A stretch of DNA of 64,000 bases, taken from positions 186,001-250,000 of the IMG/VR virus record IMGVR_UViG_3300031951_000001. One strand, 5' to 3'. Shown one piece after another: positions 3,375 to 54,080 of the stretch. How positions within the stretch are numbered: position 1 is the first letter of the stretch; the number at the start of each line of letters is the position of its first letter. The notes beneath the pieces are model-generated. The model was not told the origin of the DNA. It worked only from the letters and a program-made list of their open reading frames with translations, and searched no databases. Both the position numbers and the translations under genes were made by a program.

Positions 3375-3390
3375 ATCAAATAAGTTTTTG

Positions 3391-6300
3391 ATGGAGTTTG
3401 TAATCAGGAAAAATGCCACTTTACCACTGCTGAAAATGCAGATAGTTAAAGATGGTAGGGGTACGTATGAGGATTTTATGAATTTTATAGAGACCTCGAC
3501 TATCTATTTTTCGATGCAAAATTCTGAAACTGGTGTTATGAAAATTAACACCAAATTTGCAGGCTATGTTGAGAAGGAATTTATTGAGCCAAACTCTCCT
3601 CCCGAATATTACATTTATTATAAATTTACCAAAAGAGAAACAAACAAAGTTGGTAAATATGAAGGTCAATTCCTTTTAAAGAATGAAATAGGTACTTTAG
3701 TTCTTCCGATACGAGAAAAACTAAACATCACAATTAAAGATTCAAATTTAGAAGATGATTTAGACTATAATGAATGTTTTGTAGGACAATTCCAATGCTG
3801 TGTAATAGGACCTCCAGGTCCAAATACTCCATATGAATTTGAACTTAATGCTAACTATTCACCCGGCTCCGTTATTGCCGATTATACTCTAACCGCGAGT
3901 AAACCTGTCGATGCGACTACTACGGTATTATTTGAAAATATTTTAGTAACTTATACAGGTGAATCAATTACAATATCTACAGGAATTACAATAAATAGAG
4001 GTCAGACCACATCCTCGGTTGAAGTTGTAACTGATGGTGATTTTAGTAATTTAACACTGGCAAATTATTTTGATAATGTTTTAATTACACCTTCTACAAG
4101 TTTAACCCCAGATTCTATAGATATTAAACAATCATTTCCTCCATCAGTTCTTACAGGAGATTGTTATTGTTATAGATTTATTAATACTCAAGGTAAACCT
4201 GCAAAATTAAGATATACCCATTGTAATGGTACACCAGTCGAAACATCAATTTCACCAAATGGTAGTTACCAAGACTGTATTCAAACCAACCAATATAATG
4301 TATCAAGTGGAGTTATTGCCGGTGTGAGTCAGGAATGTTTCGGTCCTAATTATTTATGTTTTACGGCTGGTACTCCTTGTAAATGCTACAGGTACAACTA
4401 TATAGGTAATGGTGCTCAAATAGGTCAGATAAGGTATGTCGATTGTCAAAATAATACAATATCTGATAATTCAACTGATTCTGTTGTTGAGTTGTGTGTT
4501 TCTGAAAGACTTGGTGAAAAATATTATACTCATACTGAATTAGATGCGACTTGTACCACCGAAGCTGATTGTTCTTTTTGTTGTTCGGCGTCTCATAATT
4601 TAGTACTTACAACTGGAATATCCGGTGAAATAGACGAAAATGTTACAAAATTATATCGTTATAACACTCTAACCGGTAATCAAACTCTCATTTTAACAAT
4701 AGACCCTGTTTCATCACCCCCATATCAAGCTTTGGATGTTGCCCATAAATTTAGTCCTATCACTAATAATGGTAAAATTTGGATAAGTTTTAAAGGGTTA
4801 AATTCTGATAATTTACCGGACCAATATATTGAAGAGTATGACATTGATTCATCATATAACGTCCAATATAACCGTAGAATTAATATACCGTGGCTCAATG
4901 GATTACGAGAAATTGGTCACGGGTTGAGTCTTTACAATGAAAATAATTTAATTTTAACATTATGTCTTTTTGGGGTAAACGAAGAATTTGTACTTCTAAA
5001 TATAAATAATACAGGTGATATTCCTGATGCGAACTTGATACCTACCGGTATTTACTCACCATTCGAACCCACACAATTACCAAATACTCTTGATTCTGAA
5101 GGTAGAGTTAACAAAATTGTTGATATATTAATTACTTCTGACTCTAAAATAGTTGCGACTAATTACGGAATTTTGGCGAATGGGGCGGTCAATACAATAC
5201 TTCAAATTGATATAACGACTAACGATTATGAAACATTTTTTTATTGGCCAGATGTAAATAATTATGTTCAAAATTCATACCAAGGAATATTTGAAAGTTG
5301 TGGGACATTTTATTGTTTTACATATTCTGAAAATTTTAATGAGTTATGGAGTGTGGATACCGAAACTTATGAGTTAAATCAAGTTCAACCATATAATTCA
5401 AATTTACGAGTTGTGGTCGGGTGTTCATCATTATTGGTTTGCCAAACTCAAAGTTTTGTTCCTGACACTCCTTGTGCTCCTGATGCCGAGGGATGTAATA
5501 TCGCTATTACGGGTACTGTTCATAATGTATCATTTACTTATGAATACACTGGAGACGTGGTGGTGTATTCACCTCAAGATAATACAGAAGATAGTTTTAT
5601 TTGTTATGAAGATTGTATAAACGTTTATAACATCGAAGCTCTATTTTGTGGACACGGTGATGGCACCCCAACACCTGGAAATCCGTCAACCCACTTTACT
5701 GTAACATTTAATTTTGCTTCAGAAGTTAATGATGTTAGAATTGTAATATGGGGTTCAGGATGGGGAGGAAATGAAAATTTTCATATAATGACTGACCAAG
5801 GAGTCCCAACAATAACTTCATATTATAGTTGTTATAGTGAGATTATTGGTAACACAATTTATTCGGGGGCCGAACCATATCCACCTTATAAAGGTGGGGG
5901 TATTTTTAATGTAAATTCTAATAATGATTTTACATCGATTGTAATCAGTGGTGATGGCGGATGGGCTGGGTCATTTATTTATTTGTGTACAGATAGCTCT
6001 TTATGTTTTGATAATTGTACACCAATTCTATTGAGTCCTTTAGCACAAATAACTTTATATAATGGAACAAATCAATATTCAATAACTTTACCATACATAA
6101 ATGGAGGCCCATTTCCTAATCCAGGGACGAGTTATAATTACAACGCAATTGCTCATACCCCTAACAAATTGTGGATATCTAATTTCCTTTTCACAAGTGA
6201 CCCAACCAACTGGTATTTGTTAGAGTGGGATTTATCTCTGTGTCCATTTTCTGTAACGTACAATACAAGATATGTCCAAAGTGTTGATAGTGGAGTAACA

Positions 6301-9300
6301 TCCATAAGATTTGGAGAGAGTAGTAGTCCTGGACTTTTTGCCTTGAACGATACAACTTTATTGACCTCAATCAGAATTAACCAAAACAGTCCTCAGGAAA
6401 AAATAGTAATAGTTTCATTATCATCACCATTAATGACTGTTGTTGATTTATATTCATTACCAGGACAACAAGCGGTTTCGGGGGATATAATAGCAACTAA
6501 CAATTTTAATTTATTAGTTTCTACGGTAGATAATACGAACACATATAGATTATTACAATTAGATTTTATAACCGGTAATTTAGAAATAGAAGTACTATAT
6601 AATATAGGAGGAGCAAATATACGAGGTTTGTTCGAATACCAAGGTAACTTGTTCGCAACAACATCCAATGGATTATATCAGATAAACCCTAATTACCCCT
6701 ACCAATTTACCCAAGTTAACGCTACTACAACAAACCAAGATTCATCATCATCTATTTTATTTTGTAACCCAACTTATTTGTTACCACCACCAACACAAAC
6801 ACCGACTCCGACTCAAACACAAACGAATACCCCATCTAGATTACCTTTGGGTGAATTATGTAGATGTCATTATATAACTAACTATGAGAACAAACCTATC
6901 ACATTTACAGCAACAACTTGTGATTCTTCAATACCCCAAACTTATACGCTACCCGCTAATACAAGTTATCCTCCATCATGCTTCAAATTAGGTTCAGTAT
7001 ATAGTTTTAATGCTCAAGTAACAATCACATATTCTATAACACCTTGTGTATTTTGTAATGGTAAATATGTTTGTAACTCCGTATTGTGTCCTACACCTAC
7101 ACCAACTCCTACTAAAACTAGTACACCTACACCAACGTCACCATGTCAACCTCCCCAAGTTGGGGTTCAAACTTTTACCCAAGCTTGGTCAGTAAATAAC
7201 ACCTGTGTTGCCGCAGAGTTAGGTTATTATTTATTTACAACCGGTACAACTGAAGAGGCATGTCAGTCATTTGTTGGGTTCGCTGAAACTCCAGAAGGAA
7301 GTCAATATTGCCCTTCTTTAGGTACTAACACAATAACTCCATCAACCCAACAAAAAACTTTTGGTGTTTATCCTTATCCTGTAGAGATAGGAAGTAGACT
7401 TTATTCTACAGTCCCAACGTCATGTAACTGTCCATCTTTTTGGTTTAATGGGTGGGGCGGTCCTAATAATGACCCTGGCGCTCCTTTTTTGTTTCTTTCT
7501 AATGGCCCATATAAAGCTTGGTATAATGACGGGGTCATTGTAAACGGTGATAATACGTCTGTAAAAATAGCCACGATATCAGGATGTACCGTGATTGATA
7601 TAGAAATTTGTGAAGTGGTGGGATTCAATGTAAATATAATTGCGTCACCAGGTTCTGTCGATATGATATATAACTTTACGTCAACTCAACCTGTTAAATC
7701 CGCAGTTACTATTAATTTTACAAACATACTTCAAACATATACCGGAGACTCAATCTTTATCACCACAGGACTTACTTTAAATAGTGGTGAAACATCAACA
7801 TTTGTAACAGTTTCAAGAGATGTCGATTTTGATAATCTTACCTTAGGTTATTCTACTATAGATTTTTCAGTGACCTCTAATTTATACATTAATCCTGAAT
7901 TAATATATTTTAATTTCTCAATACCAACAATACCAACACCATCAAACAAATGTTACTGCTATGAATTAACAAACACGAGAACAGATGTAACCGCAATAGT
8001 CAAATATAGAACTTGCGAGAATGAAATAATTACAGATTATTTGAGCCCCCTTGAAACAATAAATGATTGTATAAGATTTAATTCAATTTCAGCTAGCTCA
8101 ATAGTCGATATTACTCAAATATCAGTTTGCGGTCCTCCTGATTATAGTTGCGTAACACCAAATGTACCATGTTATTGTTATAAATTAACTTATGATAATT
8201 CAGGTTATTTAGGTGCGATTCATTATATTGATTGTGCGGGTGAAAATCAAAGTATAACAAATACAACTCAATCATTATATGAAATTTGTGCCAGAGAAAT
8301 AACCGGAACTTTTAAATACAAGGCAGACCAATTAGGGGAATGTACCTCAACCACTCAATGTTCTCAATGTTGTACAACCAGTAAAGTTTTAGTTTTAACA
8401 AATGATTTCCCGAATGGTTCTCCTGGACCTACAGGGGTGGCCATCTATAACCCATCGAATGGTACATCAACTTTGATGAGTTTAACTTTAACAGGGTTAC
8501 CATATTCTCTTACTCACATTTACGATAACACCACAAACACAGGAAGAATGTGGATTGCTTTTGATGCCCCTGTACGTATAGAAGAATACACGCTTGACGC
8601 AAACTACAATCCTTCTTTTGATAGATATATTTTCATATCAGGAAATGAGTTTGAGATTGGAGAGTCGATAACTTATCTAAATTCAAATACTTTATTAAGT
8701 ACTAGACGGGGAACAAACCCAAGAAGAGTTGTTACAATAGATATATCTACACCAAATATTGACATCACCGTACCTCTAGTTAATACAATTTACACTATAC
8801 CATTAATTACTACTAATGCCGACGACATTACAAGTTTATTAGTGACCACTAATAATAGACTTATTGGTACTAGATATAGTGGAACATATACACAGAACGG
8901 TAGTTCAAATACAATTTTCCAAATTGACATGAACACAAATCAGCTCGAATATTTGGCGACATGGCCTGATGTTCCTTGGGAAGGCTGGTGGGACGGGATA
9001 TTCATAAACTGTAACAAATATTATAGGTTTGTTAATAATCAAGTTTCATTAAATCAATTATGGACATCCTCAACAAATTCTAATGGTATACCTACATATA
9101 GTTTAGTATTTAATAACAATAATTCATTATCAAACATATGGGACACATCTTCAAACCCTATTTGTAACACTTTTAATTTTAACCCTAACCAAATTTTATT
9201 AACACCCACACCTACTTTAACCCCAACAATAACTAAAACACCTACTAAAACACCTACCCCTACCGTAACCAAAACAAAAACTCCAACAGTTACTCCAACA

Positions 9301-12300
9301 TCAACTGATTATAAATCCGATTGTGCTTGTTATACTATAACTAACACTAGTCCATATAATTCTATTCCGATATTTTATTTTTATCGTAGATGTAAAACAA
9401 ACACACTAACGGTGGGTGTTGTTTATGGTAACACAACGTTTAGTGATTGTTATGTTCCTGGTTCGGTAACCGCATTCAACAACAATCCTAATTTAATTAT
9501 TACTTTGGGCGCGGAATGCAGTGATTGCAGCCAAGGATTTACATGTAATCCATGCCCATCTAAGACCCCAACTAAAACGCCTACCAACACTAAAACCCCA
9601 AGTAACACACCGACCAAGTCATTAACCCCAACCAAAACACCCACACCAACAATAACACCAACCGATTATCCTTATTCGGCGGACTGTAAGGTTTATTCTT
9701 TCAGTTTAATAACAGGTACTTTATATGGGTATGGGGTTGAGTCGGGGGACATAATCTATGAAATGGTATTACCAGTTCTAGGTGTTCCGACAAATATTGC
9801 AATATCTAATGTAAGTAATTTATTGTTTATATATTTTTCTCAAACTAATTTATTAATAACTTTTCAGTTTGATTATATTACAAATCAAATTATAGATGGG
9901 TCATTAACAACGTATGATATACCCGAACCAATTTTTAATCCAATAGAACAAAATCCTTATCAGAGTATAACTTCTATGGATAATGGACAAGGAGTATTTT
10001 TTACTTCACAAGGTTATAATCAAGAAAATTTAGAAACTTATTCTTTATTAACTTATGAATTAACCGGTACAATTACTTATTTATCCGATTTCCCCAATGG
10101 GTTATCTTCAAAAACAATAATTAGGGGTTCAAATAATTTAATTTTTGCATTGGTTGTAGAACAAAATTCATCCGATTGTGCAATACAACAATGGTATTGT
10201 GACGGGACCTTTGCTAACACGACTCTTCTTTATTCCTTTACATTACCATTATCGTATACGAATGGTACCTCTATATTCATTTATGATGGTGAATTTTATA
10301 TAGTTTCACAACAGTCATCACCTAATGGACCTCATATAGTATATACCGTTGACCCATACCAACCACACACATTGACTGAGGTTTCACAATTCACAATAGA
10401 ATTTGGGTATATAAATGATAGTGAATCTTTCGCTAATTGCAACCAGTTTGAATTTTACCAGTATCCTGACACTCCAACGTTAACTCCTACCCCAACATTA
10501 ACTAAAACTCCCACCCCAACAAGAACACAGACATCTACACAATTAACACCAACACCAACATCAACCAATTTGACTCAAACACCAACGGCAACAAATTTAA
10601 CCCCAACACCAACCCCTAATTGTTTTTGTACGAGCTTTAGAAATACTGTTAATTACGATGTAATTATTACTTTCAATACTTGTGATAAAAAAACAAAATC
10701 AAAATTATTAACACCTGATGGTACTCAAGGAAGTACATTTACAACTTGTGTCACGGATTACGTTGAGGATATTAGAATCAATGTAGTGTCGAATGGCCCA
10801 TGTGTTAGTGAGAGTTGCGGTAGCCCAACACCTACCCCCACAGTTACAAATACACAGACTCCGACAGTTACTTCATCTACAGGATTTATAAATGAGACTC
10901 CGACAGTAACCCCAACTAATACCGAAACCCCAACAATTACACCAACTAATACCGAAACCCCAACAATTACACCAACTAATAGTTCCACTCCTACAATGAC
11001 CTCAACTAATATTACCCCAACCCCAACTATAAGTTCAACACCATCACCAATAATCGAGACTTCAATTCTAATATCCGCAGAATATAAACCAGTCCCTAAT
11101 GGTGTTAATTATAATTTAGTTTTCAAATATAATTTTGTATCCAACACATTACAACCACTAATATCCCAGTCAGGTGAATCAATTCAAGGAATGTTATCAA
11201 CCGGTTTGGCTCACTCATATGATTTGAATACTAATACAGGATACGTTTGGACGAAGTCACCTAATTCATCACAAATAAATGAATATTCAATAATAAATTC
11301 AGATTATAATACATTATTTATAAGAACAATTACCTTGACTGGCTCATCATATGGTAAAGGTTTAACTTATATAAATGACACTACATTAATTAGTACGAGA
11401 AAAATAGGCGCTGAACAATGGGTTATTGAAATAAATATTGACCCGTCATTATCGAGCCCTATTGAGACTTTGAAATTTCAAGTACCGTTCAATCAGTCGG
11501 ATGATTATAGTGACTTAATGTTTACAAGTACAGGTAAATTTATATGGACAAACAATGGTCCATTAGGGTTCAATGTTGAGCAGTACATTTACGATACGGG
11601 GGAACTTAATTTTAGAGCACCTGCTTGTTGTACCCCAACCGCACTATGGCAATATAATGGGAATATTTATTCTTCTCAGTCGGGGGCAAATATGAGAATA
11701 AGATATGACTTAACAACCGCCGAAAAGACATTCATTTGTCCCCCAATCGGATGTGGAGAAACATCATGTGAAGACCCACTTAGTTGTATTTGTTCGGGAC
11801 CCTGTACGGTTGATTTTATATCTTTCGGAGGTTCTTCATTAGTGGAAGATAACAATGCCGAATTTGTGCCAAATATTGACCCAATTATTATTAATTTAAC
11901 AACCACTTTTGAGGAGGGTTCTATACAAATAACTTATAACATGGTTTCTAATAATCCTGTTATAGAAGCGATTAGAGTTAATTTTACAAATGTAATCGGT
12001 ACCCAGCTTGATTCTTGGTGGGCGGGAGAGCCAATAACTATTGATACTGGGGTTACAATATATTCAGGACAAACTTCAGGTTCTACTTTAGTCACACTTG
12101 AAGATAGTATTTATGATTTAGATAAAACAAGTTATTTTACTAATATCTCGATATACCCTCCTTATTTGAGTGGTATAACTACAATTGTGGAGACCAATGT
12201 TTTCCCAACCCCAACATCTACCGTAACATCAACAATAACCCCAACACCATCTATCACACCTAGTATAACCCCAACTAATACCCCCATATTCCCTCAAAAT

Positions 12301-14505: not shown

Positions 14506-14555
14506 TTATATAATTACAATGTCTAAATCTTTACTTATTAAAACGTTTACCAAAG

Positions 14556-14563
14556 TATTTATA
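14556..14563 (+). promoter_or_regulatory. TATTTATA putative late promoter
   Basis: Exact motif 15 nt before ATG 14579. Confidence 0.6.
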
Positions 14564-14578
14564 GAATAAAATCTTTGG

Positions 14579-17500
14579 ATGGAATTTTTCATTAAAAAAG
14601 GCGCGACCCTTCCTTTATTAAAACTTAACATTGTTGACAATGGAAGAAGCGATTATAACAACTTTCTAAATACGTTAGAGTTGTCATCTTTATTCTTTTC
14701 AATGACTAATGTTGAAAACGGTACCCCAAAGATAACAAACAAACCTGCAGGTGTTGGCGGCGAATACCCAAACTATTTTATATACTATCAGTTTCAAAAT
14801 ACCGACACAACAAAAGAGGGTAGATTTGAGGGTGAGTTTGTTATAAAAAATGAGTACGGTAATAATGTTTTAACATTAGGTGAAAAACTTTATGTTAACA
14901 TAACCGAGTCATTTATATTAGATGATTTAGATTACGTTTCATGTTACATAGTTGATTATGCTTGTTGCAGTAATCCTATACCAGTGCCATTACCTCAACC
15001 TTCAAGTACTCCTACTCCTACACCTACTGTAACTGACTCTCAATTATCTCTAACTCTACAAGGATTTATAAATCCAGGGTCAGTTGTTATAGATTATGTT
15101 CTAACATCAAATAGATTATTTTCACAGGAACTTACAATGTCGTTCTCAAATTTACTTGGGGTGATTGTTGGAAGTCCTGTATTAATAACAACCGGTGTAA
15201 CTTTGAGTGTTGGTGAATTTACGGGAACTACCCAAGTAATTCTTCCTGATGATTTTCAAAATTTAAATCGTGAAAGTTTATTTTTTGGTAATACCATAAA
15301 TCTTACAGGTTTAACGTATACGACTTACTATCAAAATTCAGTATTCTTTGCAACACCAACACCCACCCCAACTCCAACACCAACTGAAACAATTGTTTGT
15401 GAATGTTTTGAAATTGTTGCTCCATTAGCGAATGGTTCATATTCTTATATCGATTGTAGTGGAATTGAACAACCAGTTGTTGAATTAGGTATAGGTGAAT
15501 CTTCTAGAGTTTGTGTAGGTAATTCTAAAATAAACGCGTTTGACGGAGCCGAATTCTATGTTGTTGGATTATGTTCAGACTGTCTATTACCGACCCCTAC
15601 CCCCACCCCAACTCAAACTGAGGGTGAGATTTTTATGGGTAATATAATAGAAAATATTAACCTTAATGAAACTTTTACAACGAATGAAGAAGAATTAAAT
15701 AGGATTTTACGCGAAAGACCTAAAAAATTAAATATTGATTTACCATTTAAAGATGGGGTCATAAATGTTAATCTAACTAGACGAAATATTTACGAAAATG
15801 ATTTTAGAATATCAAATGAATTCGGAGAGACACTTTATTCAAAATTAGGAGAACATTATGAAGGTATTATTGTTGGTAGTCAAAATTCTACAGTTTCTTT
15901 AAGCATTACAAGCGAAGGGTTCAGTGGGTCCTTACAAGATGAAGGATTAGTTGTTGATATTAATAACATCAGTGGATTTACTCATCACTGCCAAGAAGTA
16001 TTTGAGGAAACTAAACATGATTGTAATACATACAATATTGATTTTCCCGAATTAGATAACTACATCTCCCCAAACCAAGAAATGTTTAATAACTTTGAGG
16101 GTGAGATTATGGCTAACATTAATTTTGAGAATTTGAATTCTTACGTTACCATGGTTGCCAACAAAAACGTGAGGTATCTCTTGGAGGTTGATTACGATAT
16201 ATATCAATATTTTGGTAATGATTTACAGGCAACTACTAATTACATCACCGCGTTATTTAATTCTATATCCGCTATCCATGCCGCTGAAGGGGTGTCGATA
16301 ACAATGAGTGAGATTAAATTTTGGACTTCGGGCGAGTCTCCATATAGGACTTACGGTCATACAATACCATGCACCGCGAACACAAGTAATCTAGACTGCG
16401 CATTAAAAAATTATAGGCAATATTATAAAAATAATAATTTAACTTTCAATGGAGATGTTAGAATGTTGTTAACAGTCGGATGGCCCAATCCTGTTGGTGG
16501 TAGTGCTAGATATAGCTCGGCGTATACTCCGGGTGTGTGCTCCCCCGATTTTTATAATTGTCTTTTCCATCAGTTAAGACCAACAACTGTCAGTCCTGGT
16601 AGCCCACCTCCTGAAGGATATGTCGATGGAGGTAGTAATTTAAGTGTTTACTACGGAAATGCCAATGGGTGGAATGTAATTGCGGGTGCTCACGAAATTG
16701 GTCATACTCATGGATGTTCTCATACATTCAGTTCGGTTTGGAATTGTAACTACACAATAGGTAGCACAAATGTTGCGGGTACATGTTGTTTAGATTGTTG
16801 TTCAGGTCTTGCAAATTGCGCTTGCGTTGGCGGTACAACTATACAAAACCCAACTAACGGTACATGTATAGCGTCAGGTGCGACAATTATGTCTTATAAT
16901 ACAAGACAACCTATATTCGGACCTCAACCACAACAGAAAATGGTCAATACGATAAATGCGGCACTTTGTTTACAAAATTTTACTACACCAACCCCTACAC
17001 CAACCCCTACAAGAACAAGTACAACACCAACTCCAACTCCTACAAGAAACACACCAACTCCAACTAAAACAAGTAATTGGGATTGTGCTGCGTCTTTCAA
17101 TATAAATATTCCAAATACAACCTCAGTAACTATAAGTGGAGTAACATTCGTAAAGTCGGTATCTCAAGTGATGTCAACTCAAAGTTTTGCGATTATACCT
17201 TCGTCATGCATAGGTTCAAGTAATATTAGTGGAGTTAACATATTAACTTCTCTAACTGATACTTCGGGTAACTACACCATGAGTTCCTCGACTTTATTGA
17301 CAAGTATCGCATTATCGTTTGGGGCTTTACAAGCAACTGATGTGATTACGTTTAGTGCAAATAATGGTACTACGTTTGTCGGAATTTGCCAAGGGTGTTG
17401 TGGTCAAAATGGCGCCGCCAATCAAATTGTTGGTACAACTTTATGTAGCCAGCTCGGAAACGTAGATGGAGGTGCATTCCGAGTCATTGTTAATTCAACA

Positions 17501-18820
17501 GAACCGTTCAATCAACTAAATGTAAAAATAAGCAGTCCTTTAAATAACGGGTGGGGTAAGTTTTTAAAAATTAATAATTTTAGAACTTTAGGAACCTCAA
17601 TCACCCCAACTAAAACACCAACAAGAACTGCAACACCAACAGTTACAAAAACCGCCAATTTTGTTGACGTAACTCCAACATCGACACCTACTGTAACGTT
17701 GACTAAAACCCTTACATCCACCCCAACAAGAACATTAACACCTACAAGGACATCCACTCAAACCCCAACAGTAAGTAAAACAAGTAATTTAATTGTTGAA
17801 AGTCCGACCTCTACCCCAACAAGAACATTAACACCTACTCCGACAAGAACCCTCACACCAACTAAATCAACTAATATTACATTAACCCTCACACCAACGA
17901 GAACAAAAACCCCTACTCCGACTAAATCGTCTAATACATCATTAACACCTACTCCGACAAGAACAAAAACCCCAACACCGACAAGAACAAAAACCCCAAC
18001 ACCGACTAAATCGTCTAATACATCATTAACCCCAACACCGACAAGAACAAAAACCCCAACACCGAGTACTTCAATATCGATTTCATTGTGTGATATTTTA
18101 AGTGTTGCAAATACAACGGGTATTATATACAAATATGATTACGTATCGAATACTGTTACCGAATTGCCGGTCAGCGGTAGACAAGTATTACCGAGTGATA
18201 TTGCCGTTTCAGAAAATTATTTATTTACGATATCTTCTAACACTATTAGAAGGTTCCAAATAACTAGAAACCCATGGACCGCAACTAACCCAACCGATTT
18301 CATATATCCGTCAGGTACATTCGCAACAAGTAACAACGGTTTATTTGCATTGAGCGACTCAACACTTATATCATTTAACACTTTAAATCAAATTATATCT
18401 GTTAATTTAACCAATTTGACAACAACAGTTTTATTTAGTTTACCTGCGGGTAGGTCAATTGCGGGAGATATAATATACACAACAAACAATAGATATATAA
18501 TTGTCAACCGAAGTATATCCACATCTACCACATTTGTTTCTCAATTTGATTCATCGGGTAACCCAATGGGTGAAATGAGTATGGCAAGTATTACATTAGT
18601 TAACGGAAGTTTATTTATTTATAATAGTGAATTATATATTCAAAGGCAGTCCACCCCTCCACATAATTATAAATTAACATTCCCATCAACAATAAGTCCT
18701 GTGTTAAGTACCGCCACAGTAACATCACTAGGATTTGCTCAACCACAAAACTGTATAAGTTTTGATTTTCCTGTTTCACCAACACCTACTAAAACAGTCA
18801 CCCCGACAAAAATACTATAG
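14579..18820 (+). CDS. Modular virion fibre-like protein with an M12/reprolysin-like zinc metalloprotease domain
   Basis: HEIGHTHGCSH (HExxHxxGxxH, 16691-16723), Met-turn IMSY (16886-16897) and reprolysin-like EVDYDIY segment. It shares the N-terminal domain with 3391..14505 and has PT linkers and a C-terminal propeller. Confidence 0.75.
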   Translation: MEFFIKKGATLPLLKLNIVDNGRSDYNNFLNTLELSSLFFSMTNVENGTPKITNKPAGVGGEYPNYFIYYQFQNTDTTKEGRFEGEFVIKNEYGNNVLTLGEKLYVNITESFILDDLDYVSCYIVDYACCSNPIPVPLPQPSSTPTPTPTVTDSQLSLTLQGFINPGSVVIDYVLTSNRLFSQELTMSFSNLLGVIVGSPVLITTGVTLSVGEFTGTTQVILPDDFQNLNRESLFFGNTINLTGLTYTTYYQNSVFFATPTPTPTPTPTETIVCECFEIVAPLANGSYSYIDCSGIEQPVVELGIGESSRVCVGNSKINAFDGAEFYVVGLCSDCLLPTPTPTPTQTEGEIFMGNIIENINLNETFTTNEEELNRILRERPKKLNIDLPFKDGVINVNLTRRNIYENDFRISNEFGETLYSKLGEHYEGIIVGSQNSTVSLSITSEGFSGSLQDEGLVVDINNISGFTHHCQEVFEETKHDCNTYNIDFPELDNYISPNQEMFNNFEGEIMANINFENLNSYVTMVANKNVRYLLEVDYDIYQYFGNDLQATTNYITALFNSISAIHAAEGVSITMSEIKFWTSGESPYRTYGHTIPCTANTSNLDCALKNYRQYYKNNNLTFNGDVRMLLTVGWPNPVGGSARYSSAYTPGVCSPDFYNCLFHQLRPTTVSPGSPPPEGYVDGGSNLSVYYGNANGWNVIAGAHEIGHTHGCSHTFSSVWNCNYTIGSTNVAGTCCLDCCSGLANCACVGGTTIQNPTNGTCIASGATIMSYNTRQPIFGPQPQQKMVNTINAALCLQNFTTPTPTPTPTRTSTTPTPTPTRNTPTPTKTSNWDCAASFNINIPNTTSVTISGVTFVKSVSQVMSTQSFAIIPSSCIGSSNISGVNILTSLTDTSGNYTMSSSTLLTSIALSFGALQATDVITFSANNGTTFVGICQGCCGQNGAANQIVGTTLCSQLGNVDGGAFRVIVNSTEPFNQLNVKISSPLNNGWGKFLKINNFRTLGTSITPTKTPTRTATPTVTKTANFVDVTPTSTPTVTLTKTLTSTPTRTLTPTRTSTQTPTVSKTSNLIVESPTSTPTRTLTPTPTRTLTPTKSTNITLTLTPTRTKTPTPTKSSNTSLTPTPTRTKTPTPTRTKTPTPTKSSNTSLTPTPTRTKTPTPSTSISISLCDILSVANTTGIIYKYDYVSNTVTELPVSGRQVLPSDIAVSENYLFTISSNTIRRFQITRNPWTATNPTDFIYPSGTFATSNNGLFALSDSTLISFNTLNQIISVNLTNLTTTVLFSLPAGRSIAGDIIYTTNNRYIIVNRSISTSTTFVSQFDSSGNPMGEMSMASITLVNGSLFIYNSELYIQRQSTPPHNYKLTFPSTISPVLSTATVTSLGFAQPQNCISFDFPVSPTPTKTVTPTKIL
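17810..18065 (+). repeat. Imperfect nested tandem repeats (TPTPTRTK / TPTKSSNTSL units)
   Basis: Repeated ccgacaagaacaaaaaccccaaca and actaaatcgtctaatacatcattaac units. Confidence 0.8.
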
Positions 18821-18852
18821 AATTAAATTAAAAAGATAATTATATTAAAAAC

Positions 18853-21729
18853 ATGTTGCAAATTATAACCATAGAAAGTGTCCATTTTGATGGTGAAATT
18901 GCGCAAATTTTATTCCAACCGTTTAATTCCGAACAAATAATTAATTTAGGTTCGGTAACATTACCTTATACATATGAACCCCCTATCGGTGTCGAAATAT
19001 ATGGTACTTACACGATATTGACACAGGAAGACCCGAGCTGCCCTTATTACATTACCGCACCTTATCCCACACCTACTAACACCCCAACTATATCTTTAAC
19101 AAAATCACAGACACCGACACCATCAATTACAAGCTCACCAACTTTAAGTTTAGACCCATGTAAAATACCATTAACACCCTCATCAACAGTTGAGCCAACT
19201 CCGACAAATTCAATAAAACCAACAAGAACTCCAACACCTACTAATAGTAAAATACCTTGTAGTCCTGACCCAACTCCGTCAAATACTCCAACTCCTAGTA
19301 TAACAAGAACTAACAAGCCAACTAGAACTCCGACCAAGACTCCAACTAAAACACCTACCAGTACTCCTTCTAATACCCCAACTATTAGTGTCACATCATC
19401 CAACACTCCTTCTAATACACCCACAAAAACAATTACAAAAACTCCAAGTTCAACAGTAACAAAAACACCAACCAATACCCCAACAAAAACAACCCAACCA
19501 ATTGCCCCAACAAAAACCCCAACTAAATCTGTTACACCTACAATCACAAACACAAAAACCAATACCCCGTCAATAACTCCTACTAAAACACCAGCATCAA
19601 CGACAACTCCTACAAAAACTATAGAACCAACCGCAACTCCACAGTCAATTGCGTCTTGTAATGATACGGTAAATATTAGAAATGGTAGTAGTGGTACTTA
19701 CACGTATGAAGTAGAATTTGGAAATGATACAGGACCGATTAAATTAAATTATAACGCGGTATCGGTACCTGATAGATTTACTGTAGTATGGGATGGAATT
19801 GAAGTGATAAATACAGGATTTGTTGGTTCTCCGACTTACGATTCACAATTAAATGCTCTTGGTTACCCTGGTGTTAGTGGTCCGGGTCGAGGTGTCGCCG
19901 CGTTCACCAAATCGTCCTCAACCCCAACTAGTGCATTTATAACAATATTAGCACCACTCCCCGGTACTGCATGGGATTTTAGTTTCTCATGTCCCGTACC
20001 TCCACCAACTCAAGCCCCTACCAAAACACCTACTTCAACTCGAGGAGCAACACCGACACCAACAAAAACATCCACTCCTACCAATACTTCTCAAGCGGCC
20101 CCACCACCTACTAAAACTCCAACTAAAACTTCAACACCAACAATGACAAGAACTCCGACAAATACACCAATAGGTCAGACACCAACAATGACAAGAACTC
20201 CGACAATGACTAAAACCCCAACGGTTACGCCTACATATACTTCGAGCGTAAATTGTTTCTGCTATAGAGTATTAACTAACCCAGGTATTGCTGTTGGTAG
20301 TTTATTTTACTACGACTGTTACACATCTCAATATGAGGAATCTCAAGTCTTATCGTCTAATACCACCACAACAATATGTGTACAATCTGGTTTCCAAATC
20401 TTTGAGAGTGGAGCGTATCCTGTATTAGTCGGTAATTGTTATGGTGGGCAGTGCATTCCTCTTACATCCACACCTACAACCACTAAAACTCCAACTAAAA
20501 CAATTGCACCATCTAGAACTCCGTCACACACTCCAACTAAAACCCCAACTCAAACTAGTTCTGATATTAATTTATCTTTGGGAGCAATATTCGGACCTGG
20601 CTCAACTATTATTGATTATGTATTGAGTGCTAGTAGAGTTTTATCTGAAACAATAACACTTTCATTCACAAATACTATTGGTGTAATAGTTGGTTCACCA
20701 ATTCAAGTTATCACGGGTGTAACAATAACTTCAGGTATGACTAGTGGGGTTACTCGAGTTACATTGGTTAACGATTTTTATAATCTATCCAAAATAAATT
20801 CATATTCAGGAATAACTTTAAACGGAAGCGGAGGAACATTTAATTACAACATAACTGAAACATCCATTTTCCCAACTAATACTCCAACACTAACTAAAAC
20901 ACCAACTAATACGCCAACCGTTACTACAACAAGAACTCCCGCCGCAACCCCAACAAAAACAATTCCACCTACTCAAACTCAATTCCCTGGACCAACGTCT
21001 ACTCCAACACAAACCCCAACTTTAACAGTTACAAAAACTATACCTCCAACTAAAACCCCAACTAGAACAGTAACTCCTACTTTAAGTATTAGTCCAACTA
21101 TAACTAAAACACCAACAGTAACAAGAACAAATACACCAACACCAACTAATACCGTAAGTATAACCCCTACAATAAGTAATACACCGTCTATTACACCTAC
21201 AATAACCGACACCCCAACAAATACACCTTCTATAACCCCTACTAAAACATCAACACCTTCAAATACACCAACAAAAACTAGTACCCCAACAAATACGCCA
21301 ACAAAAACTAGTACCCCAACAAATACGCCAACATTAAGTATAACACCAACAATAAGTAATACACCGACAATTACACCAACACCGGATTTATATCCTCCAA
21401 TAATTAATGGTGTTGATGTAACAATTACAATTACAGGTACTTCGGTTCAAATAGTTAATACGAATTTCATATATAATCGTATTTGGGTTTGGGATGGTCC
21501 GACTAATAACGCCGGTGATTTCCTTAATGAGATTGCACCTGGAGGAGGAATAGGAGATTGGCTTCCATTATCATTATTCACAACAGGTAAGATTGGTTTG
21601 TCTTATGTTGCACCTCCTACATACCAAACTTGTTATAGTATATACACGTTAGATATGGTAGATTGTTTGGCTCCATTACCAACTAGAACCCCAACAACCA
21701 CACCAACACCAACACCAAGTCCAATTTAA
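18853..21729 (+). CDS. Pro/Thr-rich (mucin-like) modular virion protein
   Basis: Much of the protein is TPT-type repeats. It has one Ig-like and one Cys-rich module shared with the two upstream genes and is preceded by the variant motif TAATTATA (18837-18844). Confidence 0.6.
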   Translation: MLQIITIESVHFDGEIAQILFQPFNSEQIINLGSVTLPYTYEPPIGVEIYGTYTILTQEDPSCPYYITAPYPTPTNTPTISLTKSQTPTPSITSSPTLSLDPCKIPLTPSSTVEPTPTNSIKPTRTPTPTNSKIPCSPDPTPSNTPTPSITRTNKPTRTPTKTPTKTPTSTPSNTPTISVTSSNTPSNTPTKTITKTPSSTVTKTPTNTPTKTTQPIAPTKTPTKSVTPTITNTKTNTPSITPTKTPASTTTPTKTIEPTATPQSIASCNDTVNIRNGSSGTYTYEVEFGNDTGPIKLNYNAVSVPDRFTVVWDGIEVINTGFVGSPTYDSQLNALGYPGVSGPGRGVAAFTKSSSTPTSAFITILAPLPGTAWDFSFSCPVPPPTQAPTKTPTSTRGATPTPTKTSTPTNTSQAAPPPTKTPTKTSTPTMTRTPTNTPIGQTPTMTRTPTMTKTPTVTPTYTSSVNCFCYRVLTNPGIAVGSLFYYDCYTSQYEESQVLSSNTTTTICVQSGFQIFESGAYPVLVGNCYGGQCIPLTSTPTTTKTPTKTIAPSRTPSHTPTKTPTQTSSDINLSLGAIFGPGSTIIDYVLSASRVLSETITLSFTNTIGVIVGSPIQVITGVTITSGMTSGVTRVTLVNDFYNLSKINSYSGITLNGSGGTFNYNITETSIFPTNTPTLTKTPTNTPTVTTTRTPAATPTKTIPPTQTQFPGPTSTPTQTPTLTVTKTIPPTKTPTRTVTPTLSISPTITKTPTVTRTNTPTPTNTVSITPTISNTPSITPTITDTPTNTPSITPTKTSTPSNTPTKTSTPTNTPTKTSTPTNTPTLSITPTISNTPTITPTPDLYPPIINGVDVTITITGTSVQIVNTNFIYNRIWVWDGPTNNAGDFLNEIAPGGGIGDWLPLSLFTTGKIGLSYVAPPTYQTCYSIYTLDMVDCLAPLPTRTPTTTPTPTPSPI
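21268..21333 (+). repeat. Perfect 30-bp tandem repeat (2.2 copies) in a PT linker
   Basis: acaaaaactagtaccccaacaaatacgcca repeated exactly. Confidence 0.9.
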
Positions 21730-21732
21730 CAT

Positions 21733-21761
21733 TTGACAACCTAACCTTCAATATTTATAAT
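21733..21761 (+). promoter_or_regulatory. Consensus sigma70-type promoter TTGACA-N17-TATAAT, overlapped by a TATTTATA motif
   Basis: TTGACA 21733-38, 17-nt spacer, TATAAT 21756-61; TATTTATA at 21752-59; directly upstream of the polymerase gene. Confidence 0.8.
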
Positions 21762-21813
21762 TGATATAAAGGTAAATGTCGTAATTTCGCGGCAGCCAAT
21801 AAACCAATCAATT

Positions 21814-39526: not shown

Positions 39527-39557
39527 CAAGTCATCTATTTATAATAAAGTTTAATTG

Positions 39558-44585: not shown

Positions 44586-44586
44586 C

Positions 44587-44913
44587 ATGGCCGGCAGACA
44601 ATATTTTAATAGGTATAGTAATTTTGTAATTAACGGACAACAAACTGTTGTTCCTTATGTAAATCTGCCGAGTAAATCAACAGATAAAAGATTTATATAT
44701 AAGATAGGTCAATCAAGATTAGATAAGATGTCACAACAATATTATGGTACTCCATATTTCGGATGGTTGATATTAGCAGCAAACCCAATTTATGGAGGTC
44801 AAGAATGGAATATTGCTGACGGGTCTATATTGACTATTCCGTTTCCTTTAGTAGCTTCGTTACAAGACTATAAAAACGCTTTAGACAATCACTTCTTCTA
44901 CTATGGTAGGTAA
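44587..44913 (+). CDS. LysM-like baseplate wedge protein (gp53-like)
   Basis: RLDKMSQQYYGTPYFGWLILAANP...LTIP. Confidence 0.8.
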   Translation: MAGRQYFNRYSNFVINGQQTVVPYVNLPSKSTDKRFIYKIGQSRLDKMSQQYYGTPYFGWLILAANPIYGGQEWNIADGSILTIPFPLVASLQDYKNALDNHFFYYGR

Positions 44914-53793: not shown

Positions 53794-53803
53794 TAAAATA
53801 ATC

Positions 53804-53834
53804 GGCGTGGGTATTTCGGTACCCACGCTTTTTT
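53804..53834 (+). terminator. Intrinsic terminator (UUCG loop) after the SSB gene
   Basis: gcgtgggtat-ttcg-gtacccacgc followed by T6. Confidence 0.85.
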
Positions 53835-53855
53835 CTAATTTATTAAATTTTTTTT

Positions 53856-54080
53856 ATGAAAATTGCGGAAAGTATGTACAAGGCGCTCATGAAAAGATAT
53901 GAGGCCGAAATTGCGGAGGCGGAAGCCACACTCTTGATTTATTTTAATAATCCTGTTGGAATTGGGGAACACCCACAACACTTGGAGGAAATGGACAAAA
54001 TGTTGGAAAAATATGCCAACGCGAAAGACAAATTGGAAATAATTCAAGCTTTAATCAAAATCGAACCAAATGGCAATTAA
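53856..54080 (+). CDS. Hypothetical protein (74 aa, VGIGEHPQ)
   Basis: Helical-hairpin-like ORF overlapping the recA start. Confidence 0.7.
   Translation: MKIAESMYKALMKRYEAEIAEAEATLLIYFNNPVGIGEHPQHLEEMDKMLEKYANAKDKLEIIQALIKIEPNGN

What the first reader, a model, noticed from the sequence alone, without database searches (positions are those of the whole stretch)
3391..21729. Shared module library reused across three adjacent genes
The same modules recur in different orders. An Ig-like unit (GSvxxdYxLtsxxp...fxNxl...GxxixxxTGxTixxGxtsg) occurs about 6 times (~3840, 7620, 11890, 12300, 15040, 20560). A ~50-aa Cys-rich unit (CxCY...Y.xC...C...C) occurs about 9 times (~4160, 4380, 6860, 7950, 8170, 9320, 10620, 15400, 20250). 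A propeller-like unit occurs about 6 times (~4600, 6030, 8390, 9680, 11060, 18090), and a jelly-roll-like unit twice (~5500, 17080). Many module boundaries are PT linkers of near-identical A/C-rich DNA. Inference: linkers act as recombination joints for domain shuffling, possibly via the phage RecA, diversifying receptor binding without a DGR.
Basis: partly seen in the sequence, partly recalled or inferred. Interest (0 to 1): 0.7.

Follow-up and report, generated by a model that had tools for sequence, protein, structure and literature searches.

The report
Modular PT-linked fibre genes of a jumbo phage
Three adjacent giant genes of a 322-kb freshwater phage encode bead-on-a-string proteins built from a shared set of small domains joined by proline-threonine linkers, and related phages show whole domains inserted, lost or swapped at those linkers, an unusually clear case of ordinary mosaic evolution of phage fibres and not an active diversity generator.

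Summary
18 of the 29 module boundaries are PT linkers. Two details fail. The two 'jelly-roll' units show no detectable similarity. The linker DNA is not near-identical: 60-75% identity, a longest exact match of 26 nt, and shared k-mers equal to what PT coding with normal codon usage gives.

Among 562 relatives, the island between an HtrL-like gene and PolB is hypervariable. A conserved N-terminal anchor with a BppU_N-like fold is followed by anything from nothing to 21 modules. In the one colinear relative (~80% nt), both module-level differences are clean cassette events with all four junctions inside PT linkers. Family-wide, PT joints have varied partners and direct joints do not.

Linker-linker k-mers are always in the same codon phase, so crossovers there stay in frame. 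However, paralogous modules are only 20-47% identical, and the locus is letter-identical in contigs from many lake samples. Shuffling is therefore evolutionary, not programmed. Whether linkers promote recombination or merely tolerate it remains open.

The parts
3388..14505 (+). Gene A, 3705 aa (TTG 3388; ATG at 3391), 21 modules
   Evidence: ORF; module map
14579..18820 (+). Gene B, 1413 aa, 6 modules including a metzincin-type protease
18853..21729 (+). Gene C, 958 aa, 5 modules, 39% Pro+Thr
3388..3807 (+). Nt anchor domain of A (beta-sandwich with a BppU_N-like fold)
   Evidence: A vs B phmmer E 2e-38. Conserved at E~1e-60 in about 55 relatives. AF2 pLDDT >90. VIA Z 7.8-8.5 to baseplate proteins 3uh8, 4v96, 6v8i, 9m8o.
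14579..14998 (+). Nt anchor domain of B
3835..4107 (+). Ig-like module A02
   Evidence: AF2 pLDDT 83-95 beta-sandwich
7615..7923 (+). Ig-like module A10
11869..12207 (+). Ig-like module A18
12283..12612 (+). Ig-like module A19
15032..15358 (+). Ig-like module B02
20548..20880 (+). Ig-like module C04
4123..4377 (+). Six-Cys module A03
   Evidence: AF2 pLDDT 85.6
4369..4587 (+). Six-Cys module A04
6826..7089 (+). Six-Cys module A08
7942..8169 (+). Six-Cys module A11
8161..8373 (+). Six-Cys module A12
9301..9558 (+). Six-Cys module A14
10609..10827 (+). Six-Cys module A16
15386..15592 (+). Six-Cys module B03
20230..20466 (+). Six-Cys module C03
4579..5463 (+). Beta-propeller module A05
   Evidence: VIA Z up to 10.2 to beta-propellers over residues 401-685
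5995..6777 (+). Beta-propeller module A07
8365..9201 (+). Beta-propeller module A13
   Evidence: Atlas leads DUF4394/DUF6923/NHL
9661..10473 (+). Beta-propeller module A15
11035..11883 (+). Beta-propeller module A17
18068..18778 (+). Beta-propeller module B06
5455..6003 (+).
   Evidence: No similarity to B05. A relative occurs in L079 after a PT linker.
17066..17608 (+).
7147..7623 (+). Module A09, single copy, unknown
12709..13419 (+). Module A20, PT-flanked; replaced by a Cys module in relative G003
   Evidence: Also found in 8 of the 150 best Cys-module representative proteins from public metagenome collections.
13561..14502 (+). C-terminal module A21 (beta-rich, a family distinct from the propellers)
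   Evidence: Diverged copies occur in G003 and L004.
15620..16984 (+). Reprolysin-like (M12B/metzincin) protease module of B, with HExxHxxGxxH at about B aa 705-715
   Evidence: Pfam PF13688 E 1e-12, 49 bits against a cut-off of 27. Motif read. Nearest relatives carry the T9SS sorting domain PF18962.
18853..19062 (+). Second type of N-terminal domain (C01), also seen in relatives' genes; giant protein D elsewhere in the genome has a similar-looking N-terminus (by eye; the HMM did not hit it)
19636..19998 (+). Module C02, unknown
   Evidence: phrog_13374 E 3e-16
21388..21678 (+). C-terminal module C05, unknown
6769..6825 (+). PT linker
7081..7155 (+). PT linker
9193..9306 (+). PT linker
9550..9672 (+). 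PT linker with a 30-nt tandem repeat
10462..10626 (+). PT linker with a 27-nt tandem repeat
10816..11043 (+). Compound PT linker (10816-10854 plus 10891-11043). Relative G003 has an extra Cys module inserted here. Contains an exact 30-nt repeat.
12193..12294 (+). PT linker
12601..12714 (+). PT linker; left junction of the A20/Cys cassette swap with G003 (nt homology ends at about 12679)
13408..13566 (+). PT linker with an exact 30-nt repeat; right junction of the cassette swap
14993..15040 (+). PT linker
15344..15397 (+). PT linker
15581..15625 (+). PT linker
16973..17077 (+). PT linker
17597..18076 (+). Long PT linker region of B, with 24-, 60- and 84-nt tandem repeats
18767..18808 (+). C-terminal PT tail of B
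19051..19641 (+). Long PT linker region of C (19051-19134 plus 19183-19641)
19987..20241 (+). PT linker
20455..20556 (+). PT linker
20866..21399 (+). Long PT linker of C (178 aa), with 18-, 30- and 72-nt tandem repeats
21670..21726 (+). C-terminal PT tail of C

Best explanation
A, B and C are bead-on-a-string virion fibre or adhesin proteins of a 322-kb freshwater jumbo myovirus.

Architecture. Each protein starts with a conserved N-terminal anchor. In A and B this is a 140-aa beta-sandwich whose fold resembles the BppU N-terminal baseplate-attachment domain. In C it is a different 70-aa domain. The anchor is followed by an array of small, independently folding, mostly beta modules: an Ig-like sandwich, a roughly 70-aa domain with six conserved cysteines, a beta-propeller, a metzincin protease and several single-copy domains. 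These are strung together by extended Pro-Thr linkers.

Evolution. Over evolutionary time the arrays are rebuilt by insertion, loss, duplication and replacement of whole modules. This happens within a gene, between neighbouring genes, between related phages and even with unrelated phage lineages.

Role of the linkers. The junctions of these events lie in the PT linkers because three properties coincide there:
- The linkers are the only places where a new junction leaves both neighbouring domains foldable.
- Their ACN-CCN coding makes every linker weakly similar to every other and strictly phase-locked, so any microhomology-guided crossover or slippage between two linkers is in frame.
- They contain in-frame tandem repeats that expand and contract.

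Shown: the module families, the linkers, the variability among relatives, the junction positions and the phase-locking. Inferred: virion location and a host-adhesion or surface-degrading function, and that linker microhomology actually raises the recombination rate. The process is slow mosaic evolution, not a programmed diversifier.
For: - Module families and counts.
- Anchor fold: AF2 pLDDT >90 for residues 1-128. Best structural matches to this part are four phage baseplate proteins: 80alpha 6v8i_BJ Z 8.5, TP901-1 BppU 4v96_AA Z 8.1 and 3uh8_A Z 7.8 (rmsd 2.6 A), and NF5 9m8o_P Z 8.1. The Atlas gives BppU_N leads.
- Propeller fold: Z up to 10.2.
- Protease: Pfam score above the cut-off, plus the zinc-binding motif.
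- Hypervariable island: the Nt anchor is conserved in about 55 loci, but the proteins range from 126 to 3705 aa with unrelated content after the anchor.
- Same modules behind different anchors or in different genes: u16 in L030 against L040_4384; u4 and u20 in protein D and in relatives.
- Window against G003 (about 80% nt): an extra Cys module lies inside the compound linker at 10816-11043, and A20 is replaced by a Cys module. All four junctions are in PT linkers, with homologous linker sequence on both outer sides. Apart from the C-terminal tail of B, all indels of 3 aa or more in B and C lie in linkers.
- Modules shared at 50% identity or more with unrelated flanks (u9, u12, u16, u29) have their internal ends at PT linkers in all but a few cases, such as one end of the u12 sub-module match.
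- Junction census: 90 PT-joined junctions give 66 distinct pairs, and 23 direct junctions give 13. Cys-prop and Cys-Cys direct joints behave as fixed blocks.
- Linker k-mers shared between different linkers are 99.9-100% in the same codon phase. All tandem repeats lie in linkers; most have periods that are multiples of 3.
- Cross-lineage spread: the Cys module occurs in 268 representative proteins. Of the 150 best, 107 have PT linkers, and one lies on a contig with a crAss-like capsid gene.
- A recombination toolkit is present: UvsX-like recombinase, exonuclease and SSB.
Against: - Linker DNA similarity equals the synonymous-codon expectation, and linker codon usage equals genome usage, so nothing indicates selection for DNA identity.
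- Exact tracts shared between different linkers are short: at most 26 nt, typically about 10.
- Linkers are also the domain boundaries, so junction enrichment alone cannot separate promotion from tolerance.
- Some rearrangements do not use PT linkers. Nt-u3, Nt-u6 and Nt-Ig are direct fusions. Three of the four ends of the Ig-Cys-Cys-prop block duplication in A are non-PT. The only near-clonal structural variant found is a 190-nt deletion inside an Ig module with 2-nt microhomology.
- Virion location is supported only by a fold match at Z about 8, which the tool rates as borderline. Pfam BppU_N is not matched. The oligomer prediction gave no answer.
- The genes lie next to PolB, not inside an obvious baseplate cluster.
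Confidence: 0.6

Rival explanations
1. Passive-spacer model. PT linkers are only flexible, perhaps glycosylated, spacers. Recombination is illegitimate, or is guided by homology in conserved modules and flanking genes, and is no more frequent in linkers. Junctions are seen there only because fusions elsewhere destroy a domain and are purged by selection.
For: - Linker similarity is exactly what PT coding predicts, and identity tracts are short.
- Against the null 'any domain boundary' (18 of 29 are PT), four of four junctions gives only about 0.15.
- The only near-clonal structural variant is not in a linker.
- At the nucleotide level the window-G003 homology resumes only at the gene A-B boundary, because module A21 downstream of the swap is strongly diverged.
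Against: - PT-joined sides of a module have many more different partners than direct sides of the same module family. For example, prop left neighbours number 6 partners over 9 PT joints against 1 partner over 5 direct joints.
- Indels and tandem repeats concentrate in linkers, so linker DNA is demonstrably unstable.
- Phase-locking makes linker-linker events in frame.
Confidence: 0.3
2. Reader's model in its strong form. Near-identical linker DNA serves as a substrate for RecA/UvsX homologous recombination, which actively and frequently reshuffles modules to diversify receptor binding, as a functional substitute for a DGR.
For: A UvsX-like recombinase is present, and no reverse transcriptase is found. 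Module order varies among relatives, and junctions lie in linkers.
Against: - Linkers are 60-75% identical, not near-identical.
- Paralogous modules are 20-47% identical, so there has been no recent duplication or gene conversion.
- The locus is 100% identical in contig G001. It is also identical in G002 apart from a single 190-nt deletion.
- Contigs from four further runs of different studies cover 11300-12700 with no difference. 15 runs from 2017-2024 hold 98-99% of the k-mers of 10400-13600.
Confidence: 0.07
3. The proteins are not host-recognition fibres. They could be capsid or tail decoration that adheres to particles or polymers in lake water, or a delivered or released enzyme array (protease, propeller enzymes) that acts on host envelope or matrix. 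In that case module turnover tracks substrates and not receptors.
For: - B carries a complete metzincin motif.
- Propeller matches include polysaccharide lyases, glycoside hydrolases and a phage endosialidase.
- Relatives of the protease domain are T9SS-secreted bacterial proteins.
- The genes lie beside PolB and not in a baseplate cluster.
- The disulfide-type Cys modules suggest an extracellular life.
Against: The N-terminal anchor's best structural matches are baseplate attachment domains. A conserved N-terminus with a hypervariable C-terminus is the classic signature of receptor-binding proteins (established knowledge). The two readings also overlap, since tail fibres with enzymatic domains are common.
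Confidence: 0.2

Closest known systems
Mosaic tail-fibre and receptor-binding genes with a conserved N-terminal anchor and exchangeable distal domains. Examples are T-even gp37/gp38, where recombination between short conserved motifs swaps adhesin specificity (Tetart, Desplats and Krisch 1998, from my own knowledge), and branched multi-RBP sets of Klebsiella jumbo phages such as phiKp24 (PMC9700779).
   Same: A conserved anchor, a hypervariable distal part, exchange among relatives, and junctions at short recurring sequence elements between domains.
   Different: Here the recurring element is a low-complexity PT linker whose DNA is not conserved beyond its coding. The proteins are long strings of up to 21 small globular modules, not trimeric fibres or tailspikes. 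The modules are families absent from Pfam.
Streptococcus thermophilus phage antireceptor, with collagen-like repeats separating domains and a host-range variable region, VR2 (Duplessis and Moineau 2001, as cited in PMC5601072).
   Same: Repetitive low-complexity coding repeats sit between the domains of a host-range protein, and they have been proposed as sites of domain exchange.
   Different: Those are Gly-X-Y collagen repeats, which form trimers, in a small siphovirus. Here the repeats are Pro-Thr linkers, many per protein, in a jumbo myovirus.
BppU (TP901-1 ORF48) and related baseplate proteins with a BppU_N domain (PF10651; PDB 3uh8, 4v96).
   Same: The N-terminal roughly 120-aa beta-sandwich has a similar fold (Z 7.8-8.1, rmsd 2.6-3.8 A). 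Like BppU_N, it lies at the very N-terminus of a protein whose remainder varies.
   Different: There is no sequence-level membership: the Pfam HMM gave E 0.042 in 1 of 50 members, and PHROGs gave nothing. The phage is a myovirus, and trimerisation and baseplate location are unknown.
PT-linked multidomain secreted proteins of bacteria: cellulases and other glycoside hydrolases with Pro/Thr linkers, and T9SS cargo of Bacteroidota.
   Same: Pro-Thr linkers join catalytic and binding modules, with combinatorial domain architectures. The closest relatives of the protease domain are T9SS cargo proteins.
   Different: These are encoded by a phage, start with phage anchor domains, carry no secretion signal or T9SS sorting domain in the matched regions, and are used at far greater density (about 15% of the genome).
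Diversity-generating retroelements (DGRs)
   Same: The presumed outcome is the same: variation of a phage host-binding protein.
   Different: There is no reverse transcriptase in the genome and no template or variable repeat pair. Variation is by whole-module exchange on evolutionary time, not by targeted mutagenesis.

Membership tests
BppU_N (PF10651) baseplate anchor domain | Sequence match to the Pfam model above its gathering score | tested here: not met
   0 families for A and B at E<=0.01. One of 50 alignment members hit PF10651, at E 0.042.
BppU_N (PF10651) baseplate anchor domain | N-terminal beta-sandwich fold like TP901-1 ORF48 residues 1-120 | tested here: met
   AF2 pLDDT >90. VIA matches: 3uh8_A Z 7.8 with rmsd 2.6 A over 91 residues, 4v96_AA Z 8.1, 6v8i_BJ Z 8.5, 9m8o_P Z 8.1. 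The tool rates Z about 8 as borderline.
BppU_N (PF10651) baseplate anchor domain | Trimeric assembly attached to the baseplate | tested here: inconclusive
   The complex prediction with three copies gave 'no answer'. Virion location cannot be tested with these tools.
Metzincin / reprolysin-like M12B metallopeptidase | Pfam Reprolysin_5 match above the cut-off | tested here: met
   PF13688 E 1e-12, 49 bits against a cut-off of 27, B residues 528-776.
Metzincin / reprolysin-like M12B metallopeptidase | Zinc-binding motif HExxHxxGxxH | tested here: met
   HEIGHTHGCSH read in the translation of B at about aa 705-715.
Metzincin / reprolysin-like M12B metallopeptidase | Met-turn and catalytic activity | not tested
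   No structure was predicted for this module, and activity needs an assay.
Beta-propeller (NHL / DUF4394 / DUF6923-like) | Propeller fold | tested here: met
   Residues 401-685 of A match Nup133 at Z 10.2, an NHL domain at Z 8.5, and many other propellers. The model is only partly confident, with pLDDT 66-87 in the well-modelled blades.
Beta-propeller (NHL / DUF4394 / DUF6923-like) | Sequence membership in a named Pfam propeller family | tested here: not met
   No Pfam hit at E<=1 apart from one Kelch_6 hit at E 0.26. A PDB profile search gave only SOQ1 NHL at E 0.012. Atlas feature neighbours are leads only.
Ig-like / Calx-beta-type beta-sandwich | Seven-strand beta-sandwich fold | tested here: met
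   AF2 residues 150-240, pLDDT 83-95, six strands of 3 or more residues listed by DSSP. Foldseek hits to Ig domains and to NCX1 CBD12. No Pfam membership.
Mosaic phage receptor-binding or tail-fibre locus | Conserved N-terminal anchor with unrelated C-terminal parts among close relatives | tested here: met
   Nt is 50-90% identical across about 55 loci, while the downstream content differs. The island is bounded by the HtrL-like gene and PolB.
Mosaic phage receptor-binding or tail-fibre locus | The protein is a virion component that binds the host | not testable with these tools
   Needs proteomics, cryo-ET or adsorption assays.
Recombination-motif systems (T-even His boxes, collagen-like repeats) | Conserved DNA motif between the variable domains, more similar than coding requires | tested here: not met
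   Shared k-mers between linkers equal the synonymous-resampling expectation.
Recombination-motif systems (T-even His boxes, collagen-like repeats) | Exchange junctions located at the motif | tested here: met
   Four of four junctions in window against G003. The family-wide shared modules u9, u12, u16 and u29 show the same.
Diversity-generating retroelement | Reverse transcriptase gene near the target | tested here: not met
   PF00078 has no match in the 322-kb genome, while the control genomes were positive.

The most novel reading that the evidence does not exclude
PT linkers may be more than spacers. Their codon-phase-locked ACN-CCN DNA would act as a universal in-frame docking sequence. 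It would let a pool of small adhesin and enzyme modules, including a previously undescribed six-cysteine beta domain, be exchanged as cassettes between genes, between related jumbo phages, and between unrelated phage lineages sharing the same (probably Bacteroidota) hosts. In this reading the neighbouring conserved HtrL/TylF-like enzyme would modify the linkers on the virion. That would be a distinct, repeat-guided mode of receptor-binding diversification alongside DGRs and classical tail-fibre mosaicism.
Probability: 0.2. Interest if true: 0.75.

Novelty: new variant of a known kind. Interest (0 to 1): 0.5.

Why it matters
Host range is set largely by phage fibre proteins, and how such proteins acquire new specificities is a central question in phage ecology and engineering. 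This locus gives an unusually legible natural example.

- It offers dozens of small modules, most of them families unknown to Pfam, PHROGs and the PDB.
- A conserved anchor is followed by 0 to 21 modules among hundreds of sampled relatives.
- The cassette events have clean junctions in one kind of linker.

If linker DNA does raise the rate of in-frame exchange, it would be a simple design rule for natural, and engineered, modular receptor-binding proteins. If it does not, the locus is still a good data set for measuring how far selection alone shapes domain-boundary breakpoints. About 15% of this jumbo genome is spent on such proteins, which bears on what large phage genomes are used for.

Tried and rejected
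- Megablast of the region and of the PolB-sheath block against named phages found nothing. The nearest named phage by sheath protein is Microcystis phage Mel-JY01, at 31%.
- The propeller alignment was too divergent to scan IMG/VR. A protein query from A found only the same three contigs, so only one moderately diverged colinear relative (G003) was available for junction mapping.
- Logan contigs laid on 9000-14900 break at the linkers. They give 'joints' with only 20-27 nt on one side, all in PT DNA. I rejected these as cross-matches from other PT-coding genes, as the tool warns. No raw or long reads were available, so population structural variants could not be called.
- A crude test using all BLASTP HSP ends was noisy: 57 of 149 ends lay within 10 aa of a linker, against 46 +/- 5 expected at random. 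Ends of alignments between distant paralogues fall inside domains, so I relied on high-identity matches and on explicit alignments instead.
- Whole-model Foldseek of the 692-aa, five-module model returned only generic two-sandwich hits such as antibodies. The wide VIA search was the informative one.
- PDB profile searches for the propeller, Ig, Cys and Nt modules gave nothing significant. Pfam and PHROGs gave nothing for any module except the protease.
- The six-Cys module model has no convincing structural relative. The best PDB match is E 0.098. The best AFDB cluster match is E 8.5e-3 with TM 0.60, to an uncharacterised protein.
- Homotrimer prediction of the anchor gave no answer and is not used as evidence.
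- A paper on a lineage of large aquatic phages (PMC12619734) does not mention such proteins. Literature searches for PT linkers in phage fibres found nothing relevant.


Full report
**Setting.** The window is bases 186001-250000 of a 322,372-bp IMG/VR virus record, rated complete by CheckV. It has about 34% G+C. It encodes a family-B DNA polymerase, a tail sheath, ribonucleotide reductase and a DnaB helicase. It also encodes a UvsX-like recombinase, an exonuclease and an SSB. It is therefore a jumbo myovirus. No named phage is close: megablast found nothing, and the best sheath match is Microcystis phage Mel-JY01 at 31%. Sequencing runs that hold the region are lake or freshwater metagenomes, plus some labelled 'fungus metagenome'.

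**The observation.** Three + strand ORFs fill the region: A 3388-14505 (3705 aa), B 14579-18820 (1413 aa) and C 18853-21729 (958 aa). I cut them at Pro/Thr-rich stretches and compared all pieces with each other.
Pairwise E-values reach 2e-25, and HMM hits are 1e-34 to 1e-41.
- The Cys-rich unit occurs 9 times. Pairwise scores are weak but mutually consistent, and HMM hits are 1e-12 to 1e-22. When 20 copies from this genome and a relative are aligned, six cysteines are invariant.
- The propeller-like unit occurs 6 times.
- The N-terminal 140 aa of A and B are homologous (E 2e-38).
That part is unconfirmed.
- Of the 29 module boundaries, 18 carry a PT linker of at least 13 aa and 11 are direct.

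The order in A is largely a repetition of blocks: Ig-Cys-Cys-prop twice and colinear, then Cys-prop units, then Ig-Ig. B begins like A with Nt-Ig-Cys. C has Cys before Ig.

**The linker DNA.** It is A/C-rich as stated: A 40%, C 36%, G 6%. It is not near-identical. Families of linker segments are 60-75% alike. The longest exact match between two different linkers is 26 nt, between two parts of one long linker region in B. The next longest are 20, 20 and 17 nt, and the typical value is about 10.

I kept each linker's amino-acid sequence and redrew codons from the linkers' own usage. The number of k-mers shared between linkers did not change: k=12, 192 observed against 194 +/- 19 expected; k=15, 50 against 47.5 +/- 12. 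Only k=21 shows a slight excess, 6 against 1.5, caused by the internal duplication in B. Codon usage in linkers equals that of other genes. The similarity is thus a by-product of coding for PT.

Two properties are nevertheless relevant to recombination. K-mers shared between different linkers are in the same codon phase in 99.9-100% of cases. All tandem-repeat arrays of the region lie in linkers. Most have periods that are multiples of three, some with exact copies of 30-40 nt.

**What the modules are.** Pfam recognises only a reprolysin-like metallopeptidase in B (PF13688, 49 bits against a cut-off of 27). Its HExxHxxGxxH zinc motif is intact. Its nearest non-self relatives, at 26-27% identity, carry the type-IX secretion sorting domain PF18962, which points to Bacteroidota.

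An AlphaFold model of A residues 1-692 used paralogues and relatives as its alignment. It is confident for the anchor (pLDDT >90) and the Ig-like module (83-95), and partly confident for the propeller. A search that does not depend on Foldseek gave two results:
- Residues 401-685 match beta-propellers, with Z up to 10.2.
- Residues 1-131 match four phage baseplate proteins: 80alpha, TP901-1 BppU twice, and NF5, at Z 7.8-8.5.

The Atlas search had independently suggested BppU_N. There is no sequence-level membership, so I treat the anchor as BppU_N-like in fold only.

The six-Cys module folds confidently (pLDDT 85.6) into a small five-strand beta domain. It has no convincing relative in the PDB or in AlphaFold DB clusters. 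Its profile finds only 268 representative proteins among 1.84 billion, often with several copies per protein. Of the 150 best, 107 also carry PT linkers. One lies on a contig with a crAss-like capsid gene, an unrelated phage lineage.

**The library extends beyond the window.** The same genome has a fourth giant protein, D, of about 3780 aa at genome 282440-293785. It has seven propellers, seven Cys modules and 24 PT stretches, and its N-terminus looks similar to that of C by eye, though the C01 HMM did not hit it. Further PT-linked proteins form three clusters. Eleven of the 17 ORFs with PT linkers are the main multi-module proteins of these clusters and add up to about 16,000 aa, or roughly 15% of the genome.

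**Relatives.** PolB finds 562 related IMG/VR stretches at 77-100% amino-acid identity. In them, the interval between an HtrL/TylF-like gene (window 969-3341) and PolB is a hypervariable island. The Nt anchor is conserved at E about 1e-60 in roughly 55 loci. The anchored proteins range from 126 aa (anchor only) to 3705 aa, and nucleotide similarity to the window stops just after the anchor.

I annotated all island proteins with the module HMMs and clustered the remaining pieces, which gave 75 distinct architectures. Examples are Nt alone, Nt-u3, Nt-PT-u21-PT-Ig-PT-Ig, Nt-PT-Ig-PT-PT-u12-PT-u9, and Nt-Ig-u14-PT-u15-PT-u16-PT-u4. Module u16 sits in an Nt-anchored gene in one phage and in a gene with the other type of N-terminus in another. 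Modules u4 and u20 occur in protein D and in relatives' island genes.

**Junctions.** Only one relative is both diverged and colinear: G003, a 19.8-kb contig with about 80% nt identity and PolB 96% aa identity. It differs from the window at module level in two places. The alignments show both as clean cassette events.
- An extra Cys module, with PT on both sides, sits inside the compound linker at 10816-11043.
- Module A20 (12709-13419) is replaced by a Cys module. Homologous linker sequence continues up to about 10 residues before the module on the left. The same ITPS/TLSLTPS repeat resumes on the right.

All four junctions are in PT linkers. Except for a 13-aa deletion that removes the C-terminal tail of B, every indel of at least 3 aa in B and C is in a linker, and further small indels of A are too. 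Modules shared at 50% identity or more between relatives with unrelated flanks (u9, u12, u16, u29) have their internal ends at PT linkers in nearly all cases.

In a census of 113 junctions, the 90 PT-joined ones form 66 distinct module pairs and the 23 direct ones form 13. For example, a propeller has one kind of left neighbour (Cys) across five direct joints, but six kinds across nine PT joints.

The second criterion, breakpoints enriched in linkers, is therefore met descriptively. The test is weak, however, because linkers are also the domain boundaries. Four of four is about 0.001 against a uniform null (linkers are 18% of the sequence), but only about 0.15 against 'any domain boundary'. 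Exchange without PT also occurs: the direct fusions Nt-u3, Nt-u6 and Nt-Ig, and three of the four ends of the block duplication in A.

**Tempo.** Nothing indicates active shuffling.
- Paralogous modules are 20-47% identical.
- Contig G001, from another metagenome, is 100% identical over 14.6 kb.
- Contig G002 is identical except for one 190-nt deletion (window 11887-12076, 2-nt microhomology). It lies inside an Ig module, shifts the frame and truncates A at residue 2837.
- That deletion is absent from contigs of eight runs. In four of them, from different studies, contigs cover 11300-12700 without a single difference, in three of them as one piece.
- Fifteen runs from 2017-2024 hold 98-99% of the k-mers of 10400-13600.
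- Only assembled contigs were available. They fragment at the linkers, and the apparent 'joints' are cross-matches of 20-27 nt, so population-level structural variation could not be assessed.

**Interpretation.** The best-supported reading is ordinary mosaic evolution of phage fibre or adhesin genes, in an unusually modular form. A conserved anchor is followed by a variable string of autonomous beta modules. PT linkers are the places where cassettes go in and out.

That the linkers tolerate junctions is certain. That their phase-locked microhomology and repeat instability also raise the rate of productive events is plausible but unproven. A UvsX-like recombinase exists and no reverse transcriptase does, but the shared tracts are mostly under 20 nt. 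From my own knowledge, efficient T4-type homologous recombination needs roughly 50 bp (Singer et al. 1982), whereas Rad52-type phage recombinases tolerate shorter and diverged homology.

Virion location and receptor binding are inferred from the anchor's fold and from the pattern of a conserved N-terminus with a variable C-terminus. A homotrimer prediction gave no answer.

**Comparison and novelty.** The closest known systems are:
- T-even distal tail-fibre genes, where recombination between short conserved motifs swaps adhesins (own knowledge).
- S. thermophilus phage antireceptors, whose domains are separated by collagen-like repeats (PMC5601072).
- BppU-anchored baseplate proteins.
- Bacterial PT-linked multidomain enzymes.

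Several things are new here. The linker type is new in a phage fibre context, since searches found no description. So are the scale and the bead-on-a-string architecture. So are several module families absent from Pfam, PHROGs and the PDB, notably the six-Cys domain. I rate it a new variant of a known kind, of moderate interest.

Noticed in passing
window 11887-12076 (contig IMGVR_UViG_3300008114_000012, loci L007/L083/L087): An otherwise identical 200-kb contig from another metagenome lacks 190 nt inside Ig module A18, with 2-nt microhomology. This shifts the frame and would truncate gene A at residue 2837, removing the last four modules. It was not seen in contigs of eight sequencing runs. 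It could be a rare defective variant or an assembly error.
   Followed up: partly
window 969-3341: A 790-aa gene with TylF-type methyltransferase and HtrL/YibB-like domains lies directly upstream of the Nt-anchored gene here, and an HtrL-like gene was found upstream of PolB in 42 ORFs across the ~80 related loci, in most of them immediately before the Nt-anchored gene. It is a candidate modifier of the PT linkers, for example by O-glycosylation. This is untested.
   Followed up: partly
genome G000 282440-293785 (locus L095), outside the window: A fourth giant gene, D (about 3780 aa), has 7 propellers, 7 Cys modules, other repeated modules and 24 PT stretches. A 1483-aa gene with 14 PT stretches lies just upstream. 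PT-linked proteins form three clusters and take about 15% of the genome.
   Followed up: partly
window 15620-16984: The protease module of B has an intact HExxHxxGxxH motif. Its nearest relatives (26-27% identity) are bacterial proteins with the T9SS sorting domain PF18962, which suggests a Bacteroidota host or gene donor.
   Followed up: partly
locus L100 (ENA contig k141_863850, 89.6 kb): A 1219-aa protein from the cluster of a representative that carries A20-like and six-Cys modules lies on a contig that also encodes a crAss-like major capsid protein. The module library is therefore shared with an unrelated phage lineage.
   Followed up: partly
window 52945-56096: A recombination gene set: SSB (52945-53793), UvsX-like recombinase (54070-55080; the RecA Pfam score is 22.7 bits, below the cut-off; phrog_97 E 5e-13) and an exonuclease (55092-56096).
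   Followed up: yes
window 39555-51901: Two further very large ORFs follow the sheath region: one of 1676 aa with one PT stretch and no family match, and one of 2332 aa with a weak 'tail protein' PHROG match. They are probably tail or baseplate components and were not analysed.
   Followed up: no
loci L004, L008, L013, L039: Module u6 is a separate 232-aa gene just upstream of PolB in some relatives, but is fused directly to the Nt anchor in others (L039, L068). This is a gene fusion or fission without a PT linker.
   Followed up: no
window 6001-22000: Strongly negative GC skew (down to -0.32) across genes A-C on the coding strand, explained by the C-rich, G-poor PT linker codons and not by replication.
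   Followed up: partly
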